A stretch of DNA of 64,000 nt, from IMG/VR virus record IMGVR_UViG_3300028275_000006, positions 148,543 to 212,542 of that record; one strand, 5' to 3'. Position numbers and translations under genes: made by a program. Shown here piece by piece: positions 18,445 to 41,893 of this stretch (within the stretch, counting starts at the first letter, position 1; each line of letters opens with the position of its first letter). Under the pieces are notes generated by a model that searched no databases, had not been told where the DNA came from, and saw only the letters and a list, made by a program, of their open reading frames with translations.

Positions 18445-20310
18445 TTAGTTTGTTTCCTTAAACTCGGCATTGATTGCATCTTCCTGAACAGGTTCAAATG
18501 GCTTGTCCTGTTTGGCCTGTGCAATCGCTTGACTGGCCACTGCTAGTTCGCTAGTCTTTTGTACGATAGCGTCTTTGTCAGAACCTGTCAATTCTGTTTG
18601 AAGTGCTTTAACAGCATCTTCGATCTTTGTTTTATCTGTGTCTGAAAGTGTTGTTTCTTTCATGTCGTTTTCAACATTGTTGATCAACGCCTCGGCTGTG
18701 TTCCTAGCATCGATAAGTTCACGTGCCTTCTTATCTGATTCGGCATTAACTTCTGCATCACGAACCATTTGTTCGATCTGCTCTTTGCTTAGACCACTGT
18801 CACTCTTAATTGTGATTTGATTTTCTTTGCCGGTGTTTTTATCTTTAGCACTAATTTTCATAATGCCGTTAGCATCGATGTCAAATGTAACTTCAATCTG
18901 TGGAGTGCCACGACGTGCTGGAGCAATACCGTCTAACTTAAACTCACCCAGGAGTTTGTTGTATTGGAATAGTTCACGCTCGCCTTGTGCTACTTTGATA
19001 TCAACTGCTGGTTGATTATCTTCTGCTGTGCTAAACACTTGGCTAGCCTTAGTAGGTATAGTTGTGTTCTTTTGTACAAGTTTAGTAAACACACCTCCCA
19101 TAGTTTCAATGCCTAGTGACAATGGTGTTACGTCTAACAATAGAACGTCTGTACGATCACCTGCTAGTACTGAACCTTGAATAGCCGCACCAACTGCTAC
19201 TGCTTCGTCTGGGTTAACGTCTTTGCGTGGAGCCTTACCGAATAGTTTTTCAACTGCTTCTTGTACCTTGGGCATACGTGTTTGCCCACCAACAAGAATA
19301 ACTTCGTCAATTTCTGATGGAGTAACACCTGCATCCTTCATAGCAACCTTACATGGTTCGATACTACGTTGGATTAGTTCTTCTACCAATGCTTCTAACT
19401 TAGCACGAGTAATCTTAACATTCATGTGCTTAGGACCACTTGCGTCTGCTGTGATGTAAGGTAAGTTAACATCAGTGCTGGCACTGCTAGATAACTCAAT
19501 CTTGGCTTTTTCAGCGGCTTCTTTTAGACGTTGTAAGGCCAACATGTCTTTCTTAAGGTTCATGCCTGACTCTTTCTTAAACTCGTCGACCAAGTAGTCC
19601 ATAATACGTTGGTCAAAGTCTTCACCACCTAAGAATGTGTCGCCGTTAGTGCTTAGTACTTCGATTTGTTTTTCGCCATCCACGTTGGCAATTTCAATGA
19701 TCGATACATCGAAAGTACCACCACCAAGGTCATAAACAGCAACTTTGCGATCTGCTTTGTCGTTTTTATCAACACCATAAGCAAGAGCTGCCGCAGTAGG
19801 CTCGTTAATAATACGCAATACTTCCAAGCCTGCGATTTTTCCAGCATCCTTAGTTGCCTGTCTTTGGCTGTCATTAAAGTATGCGGGAACTGTGATAACT
19901 GCTTGAGTAACTTTTTCACCTAAATAATCCTCTGCTGTCTTTTTCATCTTACGCAGAACTTCAGCACTAATCTGCGGAGGTGCTAATTCTTTACCCTGTG
20001 CGCGAACCCATGCATCTCCATTCTTGGATTCCATGATTTCGTAAGGCATTAGGTCAATATCTTTTTGTACAGCCTGTTCTTTGAACTTACGTCCAATAAG
20101 ACGCTTGGCCGCATAGATTGTGTTTTTGGGATTTGTTACTGCTTGACGTTTAGCACTAGCACCTACAAGTACTTCGTCTGTAGAATAGGCAACAATACTA
20201 GGTGTAGTTCTTGCACCTTCGCTGTTTTCAATAACTTTGGAATTTCCTGACTCGATGACTGCTACGCATGAATTGGTAGTACCCAAGTCGATACCGATGA
20301 CTTTGCTCAT
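18445..20310 (-). CDS. dnaK: Hsp70 chaperone DnaK
   Basis: [47 protein letters not shown]. Confidence 0.98.
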
Positions 20311-20400
20311 AACATTTCTCCTTATAATTAAGCAAGATTTTAATTGTGGGCAACTGCCCGTTTCGTAAAACCCTATTGGCGTTCTACAAAATTATTTATA
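20308..20400 (-). promoter_or_regulatory. late promoter TATAAATA plus multi-hairpin ROSE-like leader of dnaK
   Basis: TATAAATA at 20393-20400; stems GUAGAAC/GUUUUAC and GGGC/GCCC; final UCUUGCU-UAAUUAUA-AGGAGA. Confidence 0.68.
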
Positions 20401-37378: not shown

Positions 37379-37571
37379 TTGGATATACGTAAGAAGAATG
37401 TTTACCTTGTACTTTAATTAACAGACTCTTACGTATAAGACTTTCGATTATGGATTGCTCTCTTTCATTAAATCCTGCTAAGATGCTGGGCTCAGTGATA
37501 GTTTCAAGAAGTTCTTGTTCCTCCTTGCTGGTCCATACATCTATTTTTCTTACAAATTCGTTAATTTTCAT
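37371..37571 (-). CDS. small hypothetical protein (MKINEF...)
   Basis: ORF track, overlapping junctions. Confidence 0.65.
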   Translation of the reverse strand: MKINEFVRKIDVWTSKEEQELLETITEPSILAGFNEREQSIIESLIRKSLLIKVQGKHSSYVYPNV

Positions 37572-37831
37572 TTTAATTCAGCCATCTGCTTTTTAAGGTC
37601 AGTTATCTGTTTTGTTAAATCAGCGATTTGATCAGTAATTTCTTTTTTCTTGTCTTGCACTTCTTTTTGATGCTGTGCTATCTGTAACTGCATTTGTTTT
37701 TGCTGTGCGGCAGGATCCTGAGCAACCATTTGATTATTAGGATCCAGTGTGGCTCCTTGCGCTGTGGCTCCTGGAGCGGGCGCGGCACCTGGTGCTGGGG
37801 GTACTGCTTCTAATAAGTCTGATATTTTCAT
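37568..37831 (-). CDS. small coiled-coil protein (MKISDLLEA...)
   Basis: ORF track; Pro/Ala linker and Gln/Lys heptads. Confidence 0.65.
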   Translation of the reverse strand: MKISDLLEAVPPAPGAAPAPGATAQGATLDPNNQMVAQDPAAQQKQMQLQIAQHQKEVQDKKKEITDQIADLTKQITDLKKQMAELK

Positions 37832-38556
37832 AGTTGTCTCTGCTCTATACTTAATTCTTGATCTTGTAGTGTGTTAATATGATCATTGAGTTTTTCGATC
37901 CATCCCTGACTGCGTAGCATTTTGAATACTAAATTCTCTGTGCCAAATTCTCCATCACGGGCTAGACCTGCCTGTCGCATACGTTTTATGTCTTTCCACA
38001 TATCTTCTGCTAGGGCAATGTCATTGTCGCCTAACACTACAATAATTCTATCTCTGTAGTTCTTGTACTTATCCTTAACATCCTGTGTGTTAATATCTAC
38101 ATCTTGTCGTGTGGGTTTTTCAATCCAACGACTCCTTAACACGCTGTAAATTCCCAAACTGTGGTGCTCTTGGTTTACGTCCTGGGCATATAGCTCTACG
38201 TCTATACCTCGCACTTTGATGTCATGTCTAGCATTATATACATTTTTCTTGGCATCCAGCAGTTCGCGGAATTCTGGCTTGTCTGGTACAGCAACAACAA
38301 TGTGCAGATCCAAGTCACTCTGTGGAGTATAACTGAATGCCGCGTTACTGCCGCTGACTGTGATATCTTTAACGTCTAACTCAACTCCTATGAAATCTTT
38401 AAAGTGGCGAGCAATATCAATCAACGCTCTGCGTACTTCCCCGTGCATCATACCCGACTCAGTGAACAATTTAGGGTTCAGTATGTCGTGGAAGACCACA
38501 GCATTACTAATGCTAAAGTCGGGACTAGGAATACCAGTTAATTCTGTGACGTTCAT
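37828..38556 (-). CDS. Pol-beta-superfamily nucleotidyltransferase; likely start 38556
   Basis: ITVSGSNA...SDLDLHIVV (GS..DxD) plus later VELY. Confidence 0.75.
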   Translation of the reverse strand: MNVTELTGIPSPDFSISNAVVFHDILNPKLFTESGMMHGEVRRALIDIARHFKDFIGVELDVKDITVSGSNAAFSYTPQSDLDLHIVVAVPDKPEFRELLDAKKNVYNARHDIKVRGIDVELYAQDVNQEHHSLGIYSVLRSRWIEKPTRQDVDINTQDVKDKYKNYRDRIIVVLGDNDIALAEDMWKDIKRMRQAGLARDGEFGTENLVFKMLRSQGWIEKLNDHINTLQDQELSIEQRQL

Positions 38557-38563
38557 ACTATAT

Positions 38564-38989
38564 TTATTCGTCGTCCGACGCAAAAATTACTGTGTTCTTG
38601 TGCTGTGGAGATTTAGTATCCAGCAGAGCACGTTCCAAGTCTGCTGTTTCGTTCAAGTCTACAATCATTGGAATGAAGTTTAAATCTTCAATTAACAGAC
38701 CTGCATTGTTTCCTTCTGCATCTTTGTATCCGTCAGCATACTCTATGCTAAACTTAAATGTCCAGATATTGTGCTGGCCTTTGTAGGCAGATCCAAATCC
38801 ATAGTCCTTGACATCATCTTCCCTAAGTTTGGGACTGTTGATGTAGTGCGGGTTTACACGCATACCTATGGTTTGAATCAACATTGTAAAGTTTTGATTT
38901 TGGAAATAGTCTATTTCCTTGCCCGGCTCTTTTCTTCGCTGTCCAGTCTCAGTAATATCTACTAACGTCTGTATGGTAAACTCTTTCAT
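38564..38989 (-). CDS. hypothetical protein; likely start 38989
   Basis: TAAATA 5 nt upstream of ATG 38989. Confidence 0.65.
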   Translation of the reverse strand: MKEFTIQTLVDITETGQRRKEPGKEIDYFQNQNFTMLIQTIGMRVNPHYINSPKLREDDVKDYGFGSAYKGQHNIWTFKFSIEYADGYKDAEGNNAGLLIEDLNFIPMIVDLNETADLERALLDTKSPQHKNTVIFASDDE

Positions 38990-39677: not shown

Positions 39678-39722
39678 TTTAATTGTGCCTCTATGAACAA
39701 TTATTTAATGTATTTTCCAGTC

Positions 39723-39749
39723 AAAAAAAAGCCCTAGATAAACTAGGGC
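39723..39749 (-). terminator. intrinsic terminator
   Basis: GCCCTAG-TTTAT-CTAGGGC-T8. Confidence 0.85.
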
Positions 39750-39779
39750 CCTTCCTTCCCATCCCTGGGTTATTTGCTA

Positions 39780-40118
39780 TTAAGCGATTGTTAAACTAGA
39801 TGCTAAAGTAACAGTTGCACCGCTTAGGTCGTAACCGTTAACAGTACCCATTGCTTGGATACGTGCTTGTAGTGTTGTTGCATCTACAGCGTGACCATCA
39901 ACGATAACATGGATCTTGTCTGTTGCTGAATAGTACATTAAAGGTTGTACTTCACGAACTACTGCTTCAAGAGCTTGATCTACTTCACCTGCGCCGTCGC
40001 CATCTTGATCTGCTAGTGTTGCACCAGCATCGATAACGAATGCTTTTAATTGATATACTGAGTATACAGTACCTTGCACAAATTTTGTGCTACCATTATA
40101 ACGTGTTGTTGCTGACAT
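39780..40118 (-). CDS. small protein, probable late/virion protein
   Basis: Strong SD AGGAG, own late promoter and terminator. Confidence 0.65.
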   Translation of the reverse strand: MSATTRYNGSTKFVQGTVYSVYQLKAFVIDAGATLADQDGDGAGEVDQALEAVVREVQPLMYYSATDKIHVIVDGHAVDATTLQARIQAMGTVNGYDLSGATVTLASSLTIA

Positions 40119-40120
40119 AA

Positions 40121-40192
40121 TTTTTCTCCTCGTGTCATATGCCTATTACTCTATAGGACTTTTGTAATTTTATTTAGCCAAAAGGAGAAAAA
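40121..40192 (-). promoter_or_regulatory. anti-SD/SD 10-bp inverted repeat flanking a late promoter
   Basis: TTTTTCTCCT (40192-40183), TAAATA (40176-40171), AGGAGAAAAA (40130-40121). Confidence 0.65.
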
Positions 40193-40206
40193 CCGGTGTC
40201 TATCGG

Positions 40207-40482
40207 TTAGTTTTCAGGATTATTTTTAGCGGCTCTGCGCTGTTCTTGAATTTTCTGTACTCCACGGCGGAATTTGCGTGGGTCACCTGTGCGTATAGCA
40301 TTAAGGAAACGGCGTTCTAGTTCTGCACTTTCTTCCTCATTGAACTGCTGGCGCACTAAACTTAGTAGATTAACTGCGCTGTCAATGATATTTTGACCTC
40401 TATTTTCTATTAGAAGTTCTGTATTTCTACTATTGCCTAAACTACTAAGTTCTTCTAAAATCGAACGTGTACGTTTTTTCAT
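40207..40482 (-). CDS. hypothetical protein
   Basis: ORF track; upstream TTGCAA-17-TATAAT at 40512-40540. Confidence 0.7.
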   Translation of the reverse strand: MKKRTRSILEELSSLGNSRNTELLIENRGQNIIDSAVNLLSLVRQQFNEEESAELERRFLNAIRTGDPRKFRRGVQKIQEQRRAAKNNPEN

Positions 40483-40631
40483 AAGCCCTGTTTCCTGTTA
40501 TGTATTTACCTATTATACATTAAAGATTTTGGAATTGCAAGAGTCAACGGAAGTATGTGGCACTGCGTTATATTGTATAAATATATCAGTAGAAACCATG
40601 AGTTACTACACACATACACGGAGAATACAAA

Positions 40632-41317: not shown

Positions 41318-41390
41318 CAGAAGGCATATATACTATAGATTACTAGCAAGGTGCTAGTTAATCGTAACATACACACACAAGGAGAAAATT

Positions 41391-41597
41391 ATGTTTACAC
41401 CAGACTTTTACATCGACGGCGTTCAAAACGCTAAAAAGCAAATCGTTAATACATTTATCACTAACGATTCATTCAAAAAAGAACTTATCAAACTAGTTGA
41501 TGCACAGACTGAGTTTGCCAAGGGTCAAGTTAAAACTACTCTAGCAATCGCAGAAGCATTCGTTAAGAACGCATCAGCCGCTGTTTACACTAAGTAA
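41391..41597 (+). CDS. small amphipathic helical protein, phasin-like
   Basis: Helical pattern LVDAQTEFAK; tentative. Confidence 0.45.
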   Translation: MFTPDFYIDGVQNAKKQIVNTFITNDSFKKELIKLVDAQTEFAKGQVKTTLAIAEAFVKNASAAVYTK

Positions 41598-41626
41598 TCA
41601 TTAATTAACACACACAGGAGAAAATT

Positions 41627-41893
41627 ATGAGTGATTTAACACCAAAACTACCAGAAGTAAAATTCAACAAAAACGGTTATGAAATTCGTACTGACATACT
41701 AGCAATGGCTAAAGACTTAGTTAGCCAAGACTTCCATGTGAAGTTTCAAGGTTGGGAAATGACTGCTACTCGTGATGAGAAGACAGGTCAGATTGTTAGC
41801 AAAGTAGATATGCCAGAGTTTCCAGGACTTGAGAAAGTTTTAGAAGCCGCTGAAAAGATGTACGCTTTTGTTAATACTGGCGCAAAGAAATAA
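41627..41893 (+). CDS. conserved hypothetical protein
   Basis: KNGYEIRTDILAMAKD...AEKMYAFV; strong SD. Confidence 0.7.
   Translation: MSDLTPKLPEVKFNKNGYEIRTDILAMAKDLVSQDFHVKFQGWEMTATRDEKTGQIVSKVDMPEFPGLEKVLEAAEKMYAFVNTGAKK

What the first reader, a model, noticed from the sequence alone, without database searches (positions are those of the whole stretch)
40121..40192. Late-only translation switch: anti-SD upstream of an internal late promoter
Seen: TTTTTCTCCT is the perfect 10-nt complement of the SD region AGGAGAAAAA of gene 39780..40118; TAAATA lies between them, as does an inner CCTAT/ATAGG hairpin. Known: T4 e, soc and 49 are silenced on early read-through transcripts by hairpins that late transcripts lack. 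Inferred: read-through from the sigma70 promoter at 40512-40540 is translationally silent for this gene, and late transcripts are translated.
Basis: partly seen in the sequence, partly recalled or inferred. Interest (0 to 1): 0.6.

Follow-up and report, generated by a model that had tools for sequence, protein, structure and literature searches.

The report
Phage gene leader that hides its ribosome site
In front of a small, heavily transcribed gene of an uncultured river jumbo phage, RNA arriving from upstream should fold over the gene's ribosome-binding site, while RNA started at the gene's own promoter should leave it open; phage T4 uses the same trick, here next to a conserved leader hairpin that is not in Rfam.

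Summary
On the minus strand, TTTTTCTCCT (40192..40183) is the exact complement of AGGAGAAAAA (40130..40121). TAAATA (40176..40171) and the CCTAT/ATAGG hairpin lie between them.

In silico, any transcript that carries the upstream arm has its Shine-Dalgarno (SD) site paired (P unpaired 0.01). A transcript started after TAAATA has it free (0.84).

TAAATA is this phage's own promoter motif. It is 8.5-fold enriched upstream of genes, a gp55-like sigma factor is encoded, and the motif is kept in every homologue read.

The pairing is recurrent but patchy. It is significant in 16 of 56 distinct leaders of the close clade, against 1 of 37 control genes, and it uses different registers. It is missing from most leaders, including the whole distant clade.

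The T-run belongs to a terminator-like element. That element is weak here and strong in 14 relatives.

The "late-only" timing is not shown. The upstream gene has its own conserved TAAATA, so occluded read-through RNA would also be made late.

The inner hairpin is a gene-specific element with an RGAG loop. It occurs in 46 of 53 leaders (5.6 expected), has 26 different stems, and sits at a fixed distance from the ATG.

Verdict: partly supported. This is a new member of the T4 e/soc/49 kind of control.

The parts
40512..40540 (-). Sigma70-like promoter TTGCAA-17-TATAAT in front of the upstream 91-aa gene. A second candidate, TTGACT-17-TTTAAT, overlaps it.
   Evidence: 10 of 12 matches. Such hits are not enriched in the region (6 found, 7.4 expected). 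A TTGnnn-17-TA(T/C)AAT arrangement is kept at the same place in the two nearest syntenic relatives, L168 and L170. It is not kept in more distant loci.
40503..40508 (-). TAAATA promoter motif of the 91-aa gene, 26 nt before its ATG. It abuts the sigma70-like -10 hexamer.
   Evidence: TAAATA lies 13-28 nt before the ATG of the 91-aa homologue in all 9 other loci examined.
40207..40482 (-). Upstream gene of 91 aa, family phrog_11854, annotated 'virion structural protein' in PA5oct-, Rak2- and CBB-like jumbo phages.
40191..40208 (-). Weak terminator-like hairpin AACCG-N8-CGGTT. It overlaps the stop codon of the 91-aa gene and runs into the T-run.
   Evidence: dG -4.3 to -4.8 kcal/mol. At the same place, 14 of 56 relatives carry a strong canonical terminator (dG -7.8 to -14.2) whose T-run ends 9-10 nt before TAAATA.
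40183..40192 (-). Anti-SD arm TTTTTCTCCT. With its flanks (about 40204..40179) it forms a 13-pair helix plus GACA/UGUC over the AUG.
40171..40176 (-). TAAATA, the gene's own gp55-type promoter motif, 58 nt before the ATG. The start is predicted near 40165-40163 and has not been mapped.
   Evidence: TAAATA is 8.5-fold enriched upstream of genes. The modal distance to the ATG is 27-28 nt. It is kept in all homologous leaders. A metatranscriptome contig, 39752..40151, ends 12-14 nt short of the predicted start.
40142..40157 (-). Leader hairpin CCTAT-AGAGTA-ATAGG with an RGAG loop. The stem ends 23 nt before the ATG.
   Evidence: Present in 46 of 53 distinct close-clade leaders against 5.6 expected. 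There are 26 distinct stems, and the stem ends 20-29 nt before the ATG in all but two leaders. All 6 pairs change on both sides, and 0 of 500 shuffles reach the observed score. It is not a general feature of this genome: 3 of 248 genes, 2.7 expected. No Rfam match.
40116..40130 (-). Ribosome-binding site: SD AGGAG (40130..40126), A-rich spacer, ATG (40118..40116).
39780..40118 (-). Gene for an acidic 112-aa protein of unknown function. It has a small alpha/beta fold and belongs to a large family known only from environmental sequences.
   Evidence: No PHROG or Pfam hit. Model pLDDT 72.7. No PDB match at E <= 0.001. BFVD matches are only uncharacterised phage proteins. At least 222 clusters, every name given being 'hypothetical'.
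39722..39755 (-). Strong intrinsic terminator after the gene: a 13-pair GC-rich stem followed by T8.
   Evidence: dG -22.5 kcal/mol. Metatranscriptome contigs end at 39752-39797.

Best explanation
The stretch is the control region of a self-contained, insulated expression cassette for a small, abundantly transcribed phage protein. In order it contains:
- a terminator-like hairpin with a T-run
- a TAAATA promoter read by the phage's gp55-like sigma factor
- a leader with an RGAG-loop hairpin
- a strong SD, the ORF, and a strong terminator

In this phage the upstream terminator is weak. Its U-tract plus the CUCC that follows is complementary to the SD and spacer. RNA that reads through from the 91-aa gene, from either of that gene's promoters, should therefore close a 13-pair helix (plus 4 pairs over the AUG) across the ribosome-binding site and be poorly translated. 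RNA started at the gene's own TAAATA begins inside the loop, lacks the 5' arm, and should be open.

Shown: the sequence, the thermodynamics, the promoter motif statistics, the recurrence in homologues, and the hairpin covariation. Inferred: the transcription start, real read-through, and any effect on translation.
For: - Exact complement and fold.
- Partition function: SD unpaired 0.01 in all long forms against 0.84 in the short form; anti-SD pairs P = 0.95.
- The loss of ribosome-site accessibility on adding upstream RNA is 0.50. That is larger than in all 35 other TAAATA genes of the genome (mean 0.07, maximum 0.36).
- Best upstream-to-ribosome-site duplex of 248 genes.
- Promoter: TAAATA enrichment and geometry; gp55-like sigma factor (E = 1.6e-7); ATAAATA is predicted as the late promoter of the related phages CBB and GAP32 (PMC5259590).
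- Homologues: the duplex beats dinucleotide shuffles at p < 0.05 in 16 of 56 distinct close-clade leaders (2.8 expected) and at p < 0.01 in 8. Among control genes it does so in 1 of 37 (Fisher p = 0.00095).
- The partners differ between lineages: 3' A-run here; CCATAAAGGAG with CTCCTTTATGG in L011; CGAGGAGAT with ATCTCTTTG in L019; UGAUU with AAUCA flanks in L138. In WIN, L011, L015 and L019, each lineage's own ribosome site is the best partner of its own upstream arm among 15 tested.
- The nearest relatives with the same gene order keep the pairing: L168 -13.2 kcal/mol, L170 -15.0 kcal/mol.
- An RNA-library contig, 40090..40514, spans the whole leader. Another, 39752..40151, runs from the terminator to just short of the predicted start.
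Against: - There are no data on transcript 5' ends, timing or translation. The RNA evidence is contigs only, without strand information, and DNA carry-over cannot be excluded.
- The pairing is absent from about 70% of close-clade leaders and from all of roughly 25 leaders of the distant clade.
- Close relatives differ in having it: L098 has it and L110 does not. This fits weak or intermittent selection.
- Both arms are low-complexity sequence: a U-tract against an A/G-rich site.
- The leaders are phylogenetically related, so 16 of 56 overstates the number of independent events. I count perhaps 6 lineages of about 25, which is still p = 0.001.
- The expected trade-off between a strong terminator and an anti-SD is only a trend: 2 of 14 against 14 of 42, not significant.
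Confidence: 0.55

Rival explanations
1. By-product. The T-run and the pyrimidines after it are only the tail of a decaying intrinsic terminator, and possibly the upstream part of the promoter. Their complementarity to a purine-rich ribosome-binding site is tolerated but not selected and has no regulatory role.
For: - At the same position, 14 of 56 relatives have a textbook terminator.
- The T-run is kept even where there is no significant pairing.
- The pairing comes and goes between close relatives.
- Most homologues lack it.
Against: - The pairing is 16 of 56 against 1 of 37 in calibrated controls.
- Different lineages reach complementarity through different flanks, always covering GGAG.
- The CUCC core is not a terminator feature.
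- Here the helix dominates the ensemble (P = 0.95). If read-through RNA exists, it can hardly be without effect.
Confidence: 0.27
2. A strict temporal switch. Early host-sigma70 transcripts from 40540-40512 read through and are silent, and only late transcripts are translated.
For: - Sigma70-like promoter with 10 of 12 matches.
- Its -10 and -35 positions are kept in L168 and L170.
- T4 precedent (PMC3014915).
Against: - The same upstream gene has a conserved TAAATA promoter, so long occluded RNAs would be made late as well.
- Its product family is annotated as a virion protein.
- The sigma70-like site is not kept outside the nearest relatives.
- Such hits are not enriched locally.
- TAAATA also precedes nrdA and a nuclease gene, so 'late' is not established.
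Confidence: 0.12
3. The long-range helix is an RNA processing or stability element, not a translational one. It could be an RNase III-type site, or a 3' stabiliser of the 91-aa gene's message.
For: About 19 pairs in all with small internal loops. This is roughly the size of phage RNase III sites; that comparison rests on my own knowledge and was not tested.
Against: - Nothing specific supports it.
- The helix is centred on the SD in every lineage that has it, which points to the ribosome-binding site as the target.
- No Rfam or other match.
Confidence: 0.05

Closest known systems
Phage T4 genes e (lysozyme), soc, 49 and I-TevI: ribosome-binding-site occlusion on read-through transcripts, relieved on transcripts from a late promoter that lies inside the structure (Uzan and Miller 2010, PMC3014915)
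   Same: - The SD and AUG are sequestered by a helix whose 5' arm lies upstream of a gp55-type promoter (TATAAATA in T4, TAAATA here).
- Own-promoter RNA lacks that arm.
- A gp55-like sigma factor is encoded.
   Different: - The loop is long (about 50 nt) and holds a second, independently conserved hairpin.
- The 5' arm doubles as the U-tract of a weak terminator.
- The upstream gene itself carries the same promoter type, so the contrast may not be early against late.
- The feature is patchy across homologues.
- Nothing has been tested experimentally.
- The phage is only distantly related to T4: it belongs to the Rak2/PA5oct-like jumbo group.
Predicted ATAAATA late promoters of Rak2-like jumbo phages (vB_PcaM_CBB, GAP32; PMC5259590)
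   Same: Same core motif, the same tendency to precede structural genes, and a gp55-like sigma factor present.
   Different: Here the core is TAAATA with a variable -1/-2 position (GA, GC or CA). It also precedes nrdA and a nuclease gene. This copy sits 58 nt from the ATG instead of the usual 27-28 nt.
Rho-independent terminator-promoter 'insulated' gene cassettes of phages
   Same: Hairpin plus T-run immediately before the promoter, and a strong terminator after the gene. The cassette keeps its form whatever gene lies upstream.
   Different: In this phage the upstream hairpin is weak (5 pairs, -4.3 kcal/mol), and its tail has become complementary to the ribosome-binding site.
5'-UTR stem-loops that stabilise mRNA (for example the ompA leader). 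This comparison rests on my own knowledge and was not tested.
   Same: A conserved hairpin near the 5' end of a highly expressed message.
   Different: - The RGAG-loop hairpin is placed relative to the ATG (stem end 20-29 nt before it) and not relative to the promoter (8-39 nt after TAAATA).
- Its loop is invariant (GAG).
- It is specific to this gene family.
These points suggest a factor-binding or ribosome-recruiting role more than a generic 5' cap.

Membership tests
T4-type translational occlusion with an internal late promoter (e, soc, 49, I-TevI) | The SD and/or AUG lie in a stable helix on the long transcript. | tested here: met
   In silico only. MFE and centroid agree; P(pairs) = 0.95; SD unpaired 0.01 for 156-446-nt transcripts.
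T4-type translational occlusion with an internal late promoter (e, soc, 49, I-TevI) | A phage-specific (gp55-type) promoter lies between the 5' arm and the ribosome-binding site, so its transcript lacks the 5' arm. | tested here: inconclusive
   Met at motif level. TAAATA is enriched 8.5-fold, is kept in all homologous leaders, and a gp55-like gene is present. An RNA-library contig ends at 40151. No 5' end has been mapped.
T4-type translational occlusion with an internal late promoter (e, soc, 49, I-TevI) | Transcripts from upstream (early or middle) promoters really extend across the structure. | tested here: inconclusive
   The terminator is weak (-4.3 kcal/mol). An RNA-library contig, 40090..40514, spans the region. 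However, contigs carry no strand or start information, and DNA carry-over is possible. The timing is unknown, and the upstream gene also has TAAATA.
T4-type translational occlusion with an internal late promoter (e, soc, 49, I-TevI) | The long transcript is translated much less than the short one. | not testable with these tools
   Needs reporter fusions or toeprinting.
T4-type translational occlusion with an internal late promoter (e, soc, 49, I-TevI) | The structure is conserved in related phages. | tested here: inconclusive
   Significant in 16 of 56 close-clade leaders against 1 of 37 controls, with register changes. Kept in the nearest syntenic relatives. Absent from most leaders and from the distant clade.
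Intrinsic (Rho-independent) terminator | A GC-rich stem-loop directly followed by a U-tract. | tested here: inconclusive
   Here: 5 pairs (3 G-C), an 8-nt loop, -4.3 kcal/mol, then UUUUUCUCCUUUU. It passes the simple scan but is weak. The homologous position is a strong terminator in 14 of 56 relatives.
Any Rfam RNA family | A covariance-model match at or near the gathering score. | tested here: not met
   Only one sub-threshold chance hit, elsewhere in the region (AgrB, 21 bits against a gathering score of 40).

The most novel reading that the evidence does not exclude
The RGAG-loop hairpin, about 10 nt upstream of the SD, may be a previously undescribed, gene-specific cis-regulatory RNA. It could be a docking site for a phage or host factor, or a ribosome standby site. 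It defines a portable expression cassette of a very large family of uncultured aquatic jumbo-phage genes. In this reading, the terminator and the anti-SD are interchangeable insulators that evolution swaps at the cassette's 5' edge.
Probability: 0.3. Interest if true: 0.55.

Novelty: new member of a known kind. Interest (0 to 1): 0.36.

Why it matters
If the occlusion works, the T4 solution of hiding the ribosome-binding site on read-through RNA and exposing it from an internal gp55-type promoter reaches far beyond the T-even phages. It would extend to Rak2/PA5oct-like jumbo phages known only from metagenomes. It would also be evolutionarily fluid, perhaps interchangeable with a terminator.

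The analysis also yields a compact, well-delimited natural expression cassette and a covarying leader hairpin that has no Rfam entry. Both could be used to annotate promoters and highly expressed genes in uncultured jumbo phages.

It answers no long-standing question.

Tried and rejected
1. DNA and protein BLAST of the locus against 50,697 phage records found no match for the 112-aa gene. Only the 91-aa neighbour placed the phage.
2. PHROG, Pfam, PDB Foldseek, BFVD, the ESM Atlas and the 5.8-billion-protein search gave no function for the 112-aa protein. RRM-like and TnpA-like fold hits have E = 0.02-0.1 and TM about 0.4, too weak to use. The protein is acidic, so self-binding to its own leader is unlikely.
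3. T-run as a general feature of TAAATA promoters: rejected. The other 37 sites mostly have T-runs of 2-3 nt.
4. T-run as a canonical terminator in every homologue: rejected for the distant clade and many others.
5. Trade-off between terminator strength and anti-SD: only a trend (Spearman 0.20, p = 0.14; 2 of 14 against 14 of 42).
6. Inner hairpin as a generic 5' stabiliser of this phage's leaders: rejected. The RGAG hairpin occurs in 3 of 248 genes, 2.7 expected. Its position tracks the ATG, not the promoter.
7. T4's exact TATAAATA is not the motif here; there are 7 copies in 212 kb.
8. Rfam: nothing.
9. Metatranscriptome contigs cannot give starts, strand or levels. Depth differences between contigs were seen but are not used as evidence.
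10. My first terminator script picked the wrong T-run. It was redone.
11. In L115 my parser took the wrong one of two TAAATA copies, so its row is unreliable.
12. Ascertainment caveat: the hairpin segments counted were chosen because their inner 4 pairs form. The unbiased figure is 46 of 53 against 5.6 expected.

Full report
**What is in the sequence**

Everything reads on the minus strand.
- TTTTTCTCCT at 40192..40183
- TAAATA at 40176..40171
- CCTAT/ATAGG at 40157..40153 and 40146..40142
- AGGAGAAAAA at 40130..40121
- ATG at 40118, heading a 112-codon ORF that ends at 39780

The sigma70-like TTGCAA-17-TATAAT lies at 40540..40512. The T-run is preceded by a 5-pair hairpin, AACCG-N8-CGGTT (40208..40191), which the terminator scan picks up. 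The upstream 91-aa gene (40482..40207) has its own TAAATA at 40508..40503, abutting the sigma70-like -10 hexamer.

**Genome context**

The window is the last 64 kb of a 212.5-kb IMG/VR virus record, estimated 55% complete. The 91-aa neighbour belongs to phrog_11854. It matches "virion structural protein" genes of PA5oct-, Rak2/PBECO4/121Q-, CBB/Serratia BF- and Yersinia fHe-Yen9-like jumbo phages. A gp55-like sigma factor is encoded at G000:148-453 (E = 1.6e-7 against T4 gp55).

T4's TATAAATA is rare here, with 7 copies. TAAATA, in contrast, is the most enriched hexamer upstream of genes: 49 observed against 5.8 expected. Its modal distance is 27-28 nt before the ATG. It precedes tail-spike, tail-fibre and virion-protein genes, but also nrdA and a nuclease gene. 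For the related phages CBB and GAP32, ATAAATA was predicted as the late promoter, together with a gp55-like factor (PMC5259590).

TAAATA is therefore a credible phage-specific promoter core. The label "late" is likely but not strict.

**Folding**

- The 116-nt stretch from the stop codon of the upstream gene folds into the proposed long-range helix. It has 13 pairs (10 Watson-Crick plus wobbles) and GACA/UGUC over the AUG. The helix encloses TAAATA and the inner hairpin. dG is -21.1 kcal/mol and z is -2.06.
- The helix persists in 241-446-nt contexts. The ten core pairs have mean probability 0.95 and the SD is unpaired with probability 0.01.
- A transcript starting 6-12 nt after TAAATA leaves the SD unpaired with probability 0.84.
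- Adding upstream RNA lowers ribosome-site accessibility by 0.50. For 35 other TAAATA genes of the same genome the mean drop is 0.07 (sd 0.13, maximum 0.36).
- Among 248 genes this one has the strongest duplex between upstream region and ribosome-binding site. It is one of two with an exact complement of 10 nt or more.

**Homologues**

The 112-aa protein has no match in isolated phages. It has hundreds of relatives in viral and metagenomic contigs. I read 38 distinct leaders from viral contigs, 52 more from metagenomes, and 4 from the nearest relatives.

Every leader has TAAATA 47-77 nt before the ATG (L115's 84 nt is a parsing error, noted under Tried and rejected) and a hairpin between TAAATA and the SD. 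Nearly every one has a T-run ending 9-11 nt before TAAATA. The cassette keeps this form whatever gene lies upstream. In most loci the 91-aa gene is about 2 kb away, with three genes in between. Only the lineage of this window, with L168 and L170, has it adjacent.

**Is the anti-SD conserved?**

I compared the duplex between the 35 nt before TAAATA and the ribosome-binding site (-20..+4) with 300 dinucleotide-preserving shuffles of the upstream arm.

- In the close clade (112-120-aa proteins) it is significant at p < 0.05 in 16 of 56 distinct leaders (2.8 expected) and at p < 0.01 in 8.
- The same test on 37 other TAAATA genes of this genome gives 1 at p < 0.05. The test is therefore calibrated (Fisher p = 0.00095).
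- The solutions differ between lineages:
  - This window and L015 pair UUUUUCUCC with GGAGAAAAA.
  - L011 pairs CUCCUUUAUGG with CCAUAAAGGAG, using the 5' flank of the SD instead.
  - L019 and L092 pair (A/G)UCUCUUUG with CGAGGAGAU.
  - L138 adds AAUCA with UGAUU.
- In WIN, L011, L015 and L019, the lineage's own ribosome-binding site is the best partner of its own upstream arm among 15 tested.
- The nearest relatives with the same gene order keep it: L168 at -13.2 kcal/mol (p = 0.01) and L170 at -15.0 kcal/mol (p = 0.000).

Against this:
- About 70% of close-clade leaders lack it, and so do all leaders of the distant 130-149-aa clade.
- Close relatives can differ: L098 has it and L110 does not.
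- The leaders are not independent. If I count about 6 lineages of about 25, the excess is still p = 0.001, but that count is my estimate.

**What the T-run is**

In 14 of 56 close-clade leaders the element before the promoter is a textbook terminator: an A-tract, a 7-11-pair GC stem (dG -7.8 to -14.2 kcal/mol) and T6-8. The T-run ends 9-10 nt before TAAATA, and the stems differ between lineages. Here the homologous hairpin is weak, at -4.3 kcal/mol. Only 2 of the 14 strong-terminator leaders also show the anti-SD, against 14 of 42 of the rest. That trend fits "either terminate or occlude", but it is not significant. T-runs are not a general feature of this phage's TAAATA promoters.

**The inner hairpin**

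It is more than a spacer.
- 46 of 53 distinct close-clade leaders have a hairpin of at least 4 pairs with a 5-7-nt loop containing GAG (AGAGA, AGAGUA, GGAGC and others). Shuffles give 5.6. There are 26 distinct stems.
- The stem ends 20-29 nt before the ATG in all but two leaders, while its distance from TAAATA varies from 8 to 39 nt. Some lineages insert an extra 5' hairpin.
- On gap-free alignments of 19 and 9 sequences, all six pairs change on both sides (47 and 24 cells). The GAG of the loop is invariant. None of 500 shuffles and no slid register comes near the observed score. The segments were chosen because their inner four pairs form, so 46 of 53 against 5.6 is the unbiased figure.
- The motif is not general in this genome: 3 of 248 leaders, 2.7 expected. 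It has no Rfam match.
- Its function is unknown. Its fixed position relative to the SD and its invariant purine loop suggest a factor-binding or ribosome-recruiting role more than a plain 5' stabiliser. That is inference.

**RNA evidence**

Six riverine metatranscriptome runs hold the region, but only as assembled contigs.
- In run X18 a 400-nt contig covers 39752..40151. That is from the 3' terminator to 12-14 nt short of the predicted start.
- A separate X18 contig covers 40130..40335.
- In run X17 a contig covers 40090..40514 and so spans the whole leader.

This is compatible with a discrete message of about 410 nt plus some read-through RNA. Contigs carry no start, strand or reliable level, and DNA carry-over cannot be excluded. 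I do not use depth as evidence.

**The timing claim**

TAAATA lies 13-28 nt before the ATG of the 91-aa gene in all loci examined, and that gene's family is annotated as a virion protein. Transcripts from 40508-40503 would carry the anti-SD and would be made at the same time as the gene's own message.

The sigma70-like promoter is kept, as TTGnnn-17-TA(T/C)AAT, in L168 and L170 but not further out. The defensible statement is that read-through RNA is occluded and own-promoter RNA is open. "Early silent, late translated" is one possible consequence and has not been shown.

**The protein**

It is acidic and 112 aa long. The model is a small alpha/beta fold (pLDDT 72.7). There is no PHROG or Pfam family and no PDB match at E <= 0.001. 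BFVD matches are only to uncharacterised phage proteins. At least 222 protein clusters matched, and every name that any source gives is "hypothetical". Its dedicated promoter, strong SD and flanking terminators suggest an abundant product, possibly structural. That is inference.

**Comparison with what is known, and verdict**

The arrangement works like T4 e, soc, 49 and I-TevI (PMC3014915). It meets the in-silico features of that class, but the experimental ones are untested. It differs in four ways:
- The 5' arm doubles as a terminator tail.
- The loop is long and holds an independently conserved hairpin.
- The upstream gene carries the same promoter type.
- The pairing is patchy across relatives.

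I rate it a new member of a known kind, of moderate interest. My confidence that the occlusion is functional in this phage is 0.55. 

Noticed in passing
window 40491-40540 (minus strand): A sigma70-like -10 hexamer (TATAAT, 40517..40512) is followed after 3 nt by TAAATA (40508..40503). Elsewhere in the record, TAAATA sits inside the spacer of strong TTGACA-N17-TATAAT promoters (genes starting at G000 149719, 42168, 116332 and 51898). This suggests deliberately overlapping host-type and phage-type promoters.
   Followed up: partly
window 37385-37445 (minus strand), gene start 37378: This is the only other gene in the 212-kb record with an exact complement of 10 nt or more to its own start region. 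An 11-nt inverted repeat, TATACGTAAGA / TCTTACGTATA, covers -17..-7 of the ATG and lies inside the preceding coding region.
   Followed up: no
window 41370-41801 (plus-strand ORFs 41391..41597 and 41627..41893): All four metatranscriptome runs give contigs over these two small ORFs of unknown function (68 and 88 aa), with identical ends at 41370 and 41770. A related variant joins at 41801. No PHROG hit for the 88-aa product.
   Followed up: no
window 20310-20400 (minus strand); L086 about 50-130; L085 about 885-970: A second class of long leaders: TAAATA, then (A/T)TTTTGTAG, then a very stable hairpin that starts 2-5 nt after the motif (dG -7 to -18 kcal/mol), 82-88 nt before the ATG. It precedes a 621-aa phrog_22485 protein, a PhoH-like protein and a 252-aa unknown protein.
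   Followed up: partly
G000:C1:148-453 (minus strand; outside the window): A gp55-like late sigma factor: 35% identity to T4 gp55 over 103 residues, E = 1.6e-7, in a 280-aa open frame.
   Followed up: partly
window 32832 and 44634 (gene starts, minus strand): TAAATA at the canonical 30-32 nt also precedes the ribonucleotide reductase large subunit and a nuclease gene. The motif is therefore not confined to structural genes.
   Followed up: no
L011 and L019, 500-3000; L167 1-394: In most relatives, three genes separate the 91-aa and 112-aa genes. They encode proteins of about 230 aa, about 375 aa (weak DUF6267 hit) and about 88 aa. In this window and in L168 and L170 the two genes are adjacent, and a homologue of the 230-aa-class protein (251 aa, weak nucleotidyltransferase hit) lies downstream at 37828..38583. 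This is a local rearrangement.
   Followed up: partly
window 40179-40186 and 40159-40164 (minus strand): CTTTTG just before TAAATA is the complement of CAAAAG just after it, so an inverted repeat brackets the promoter core. Several relatives keep CTTTG/CAAAG, while others have CCAAAAG on the upstream side instead. Meaning unknown.
   Followed up: no
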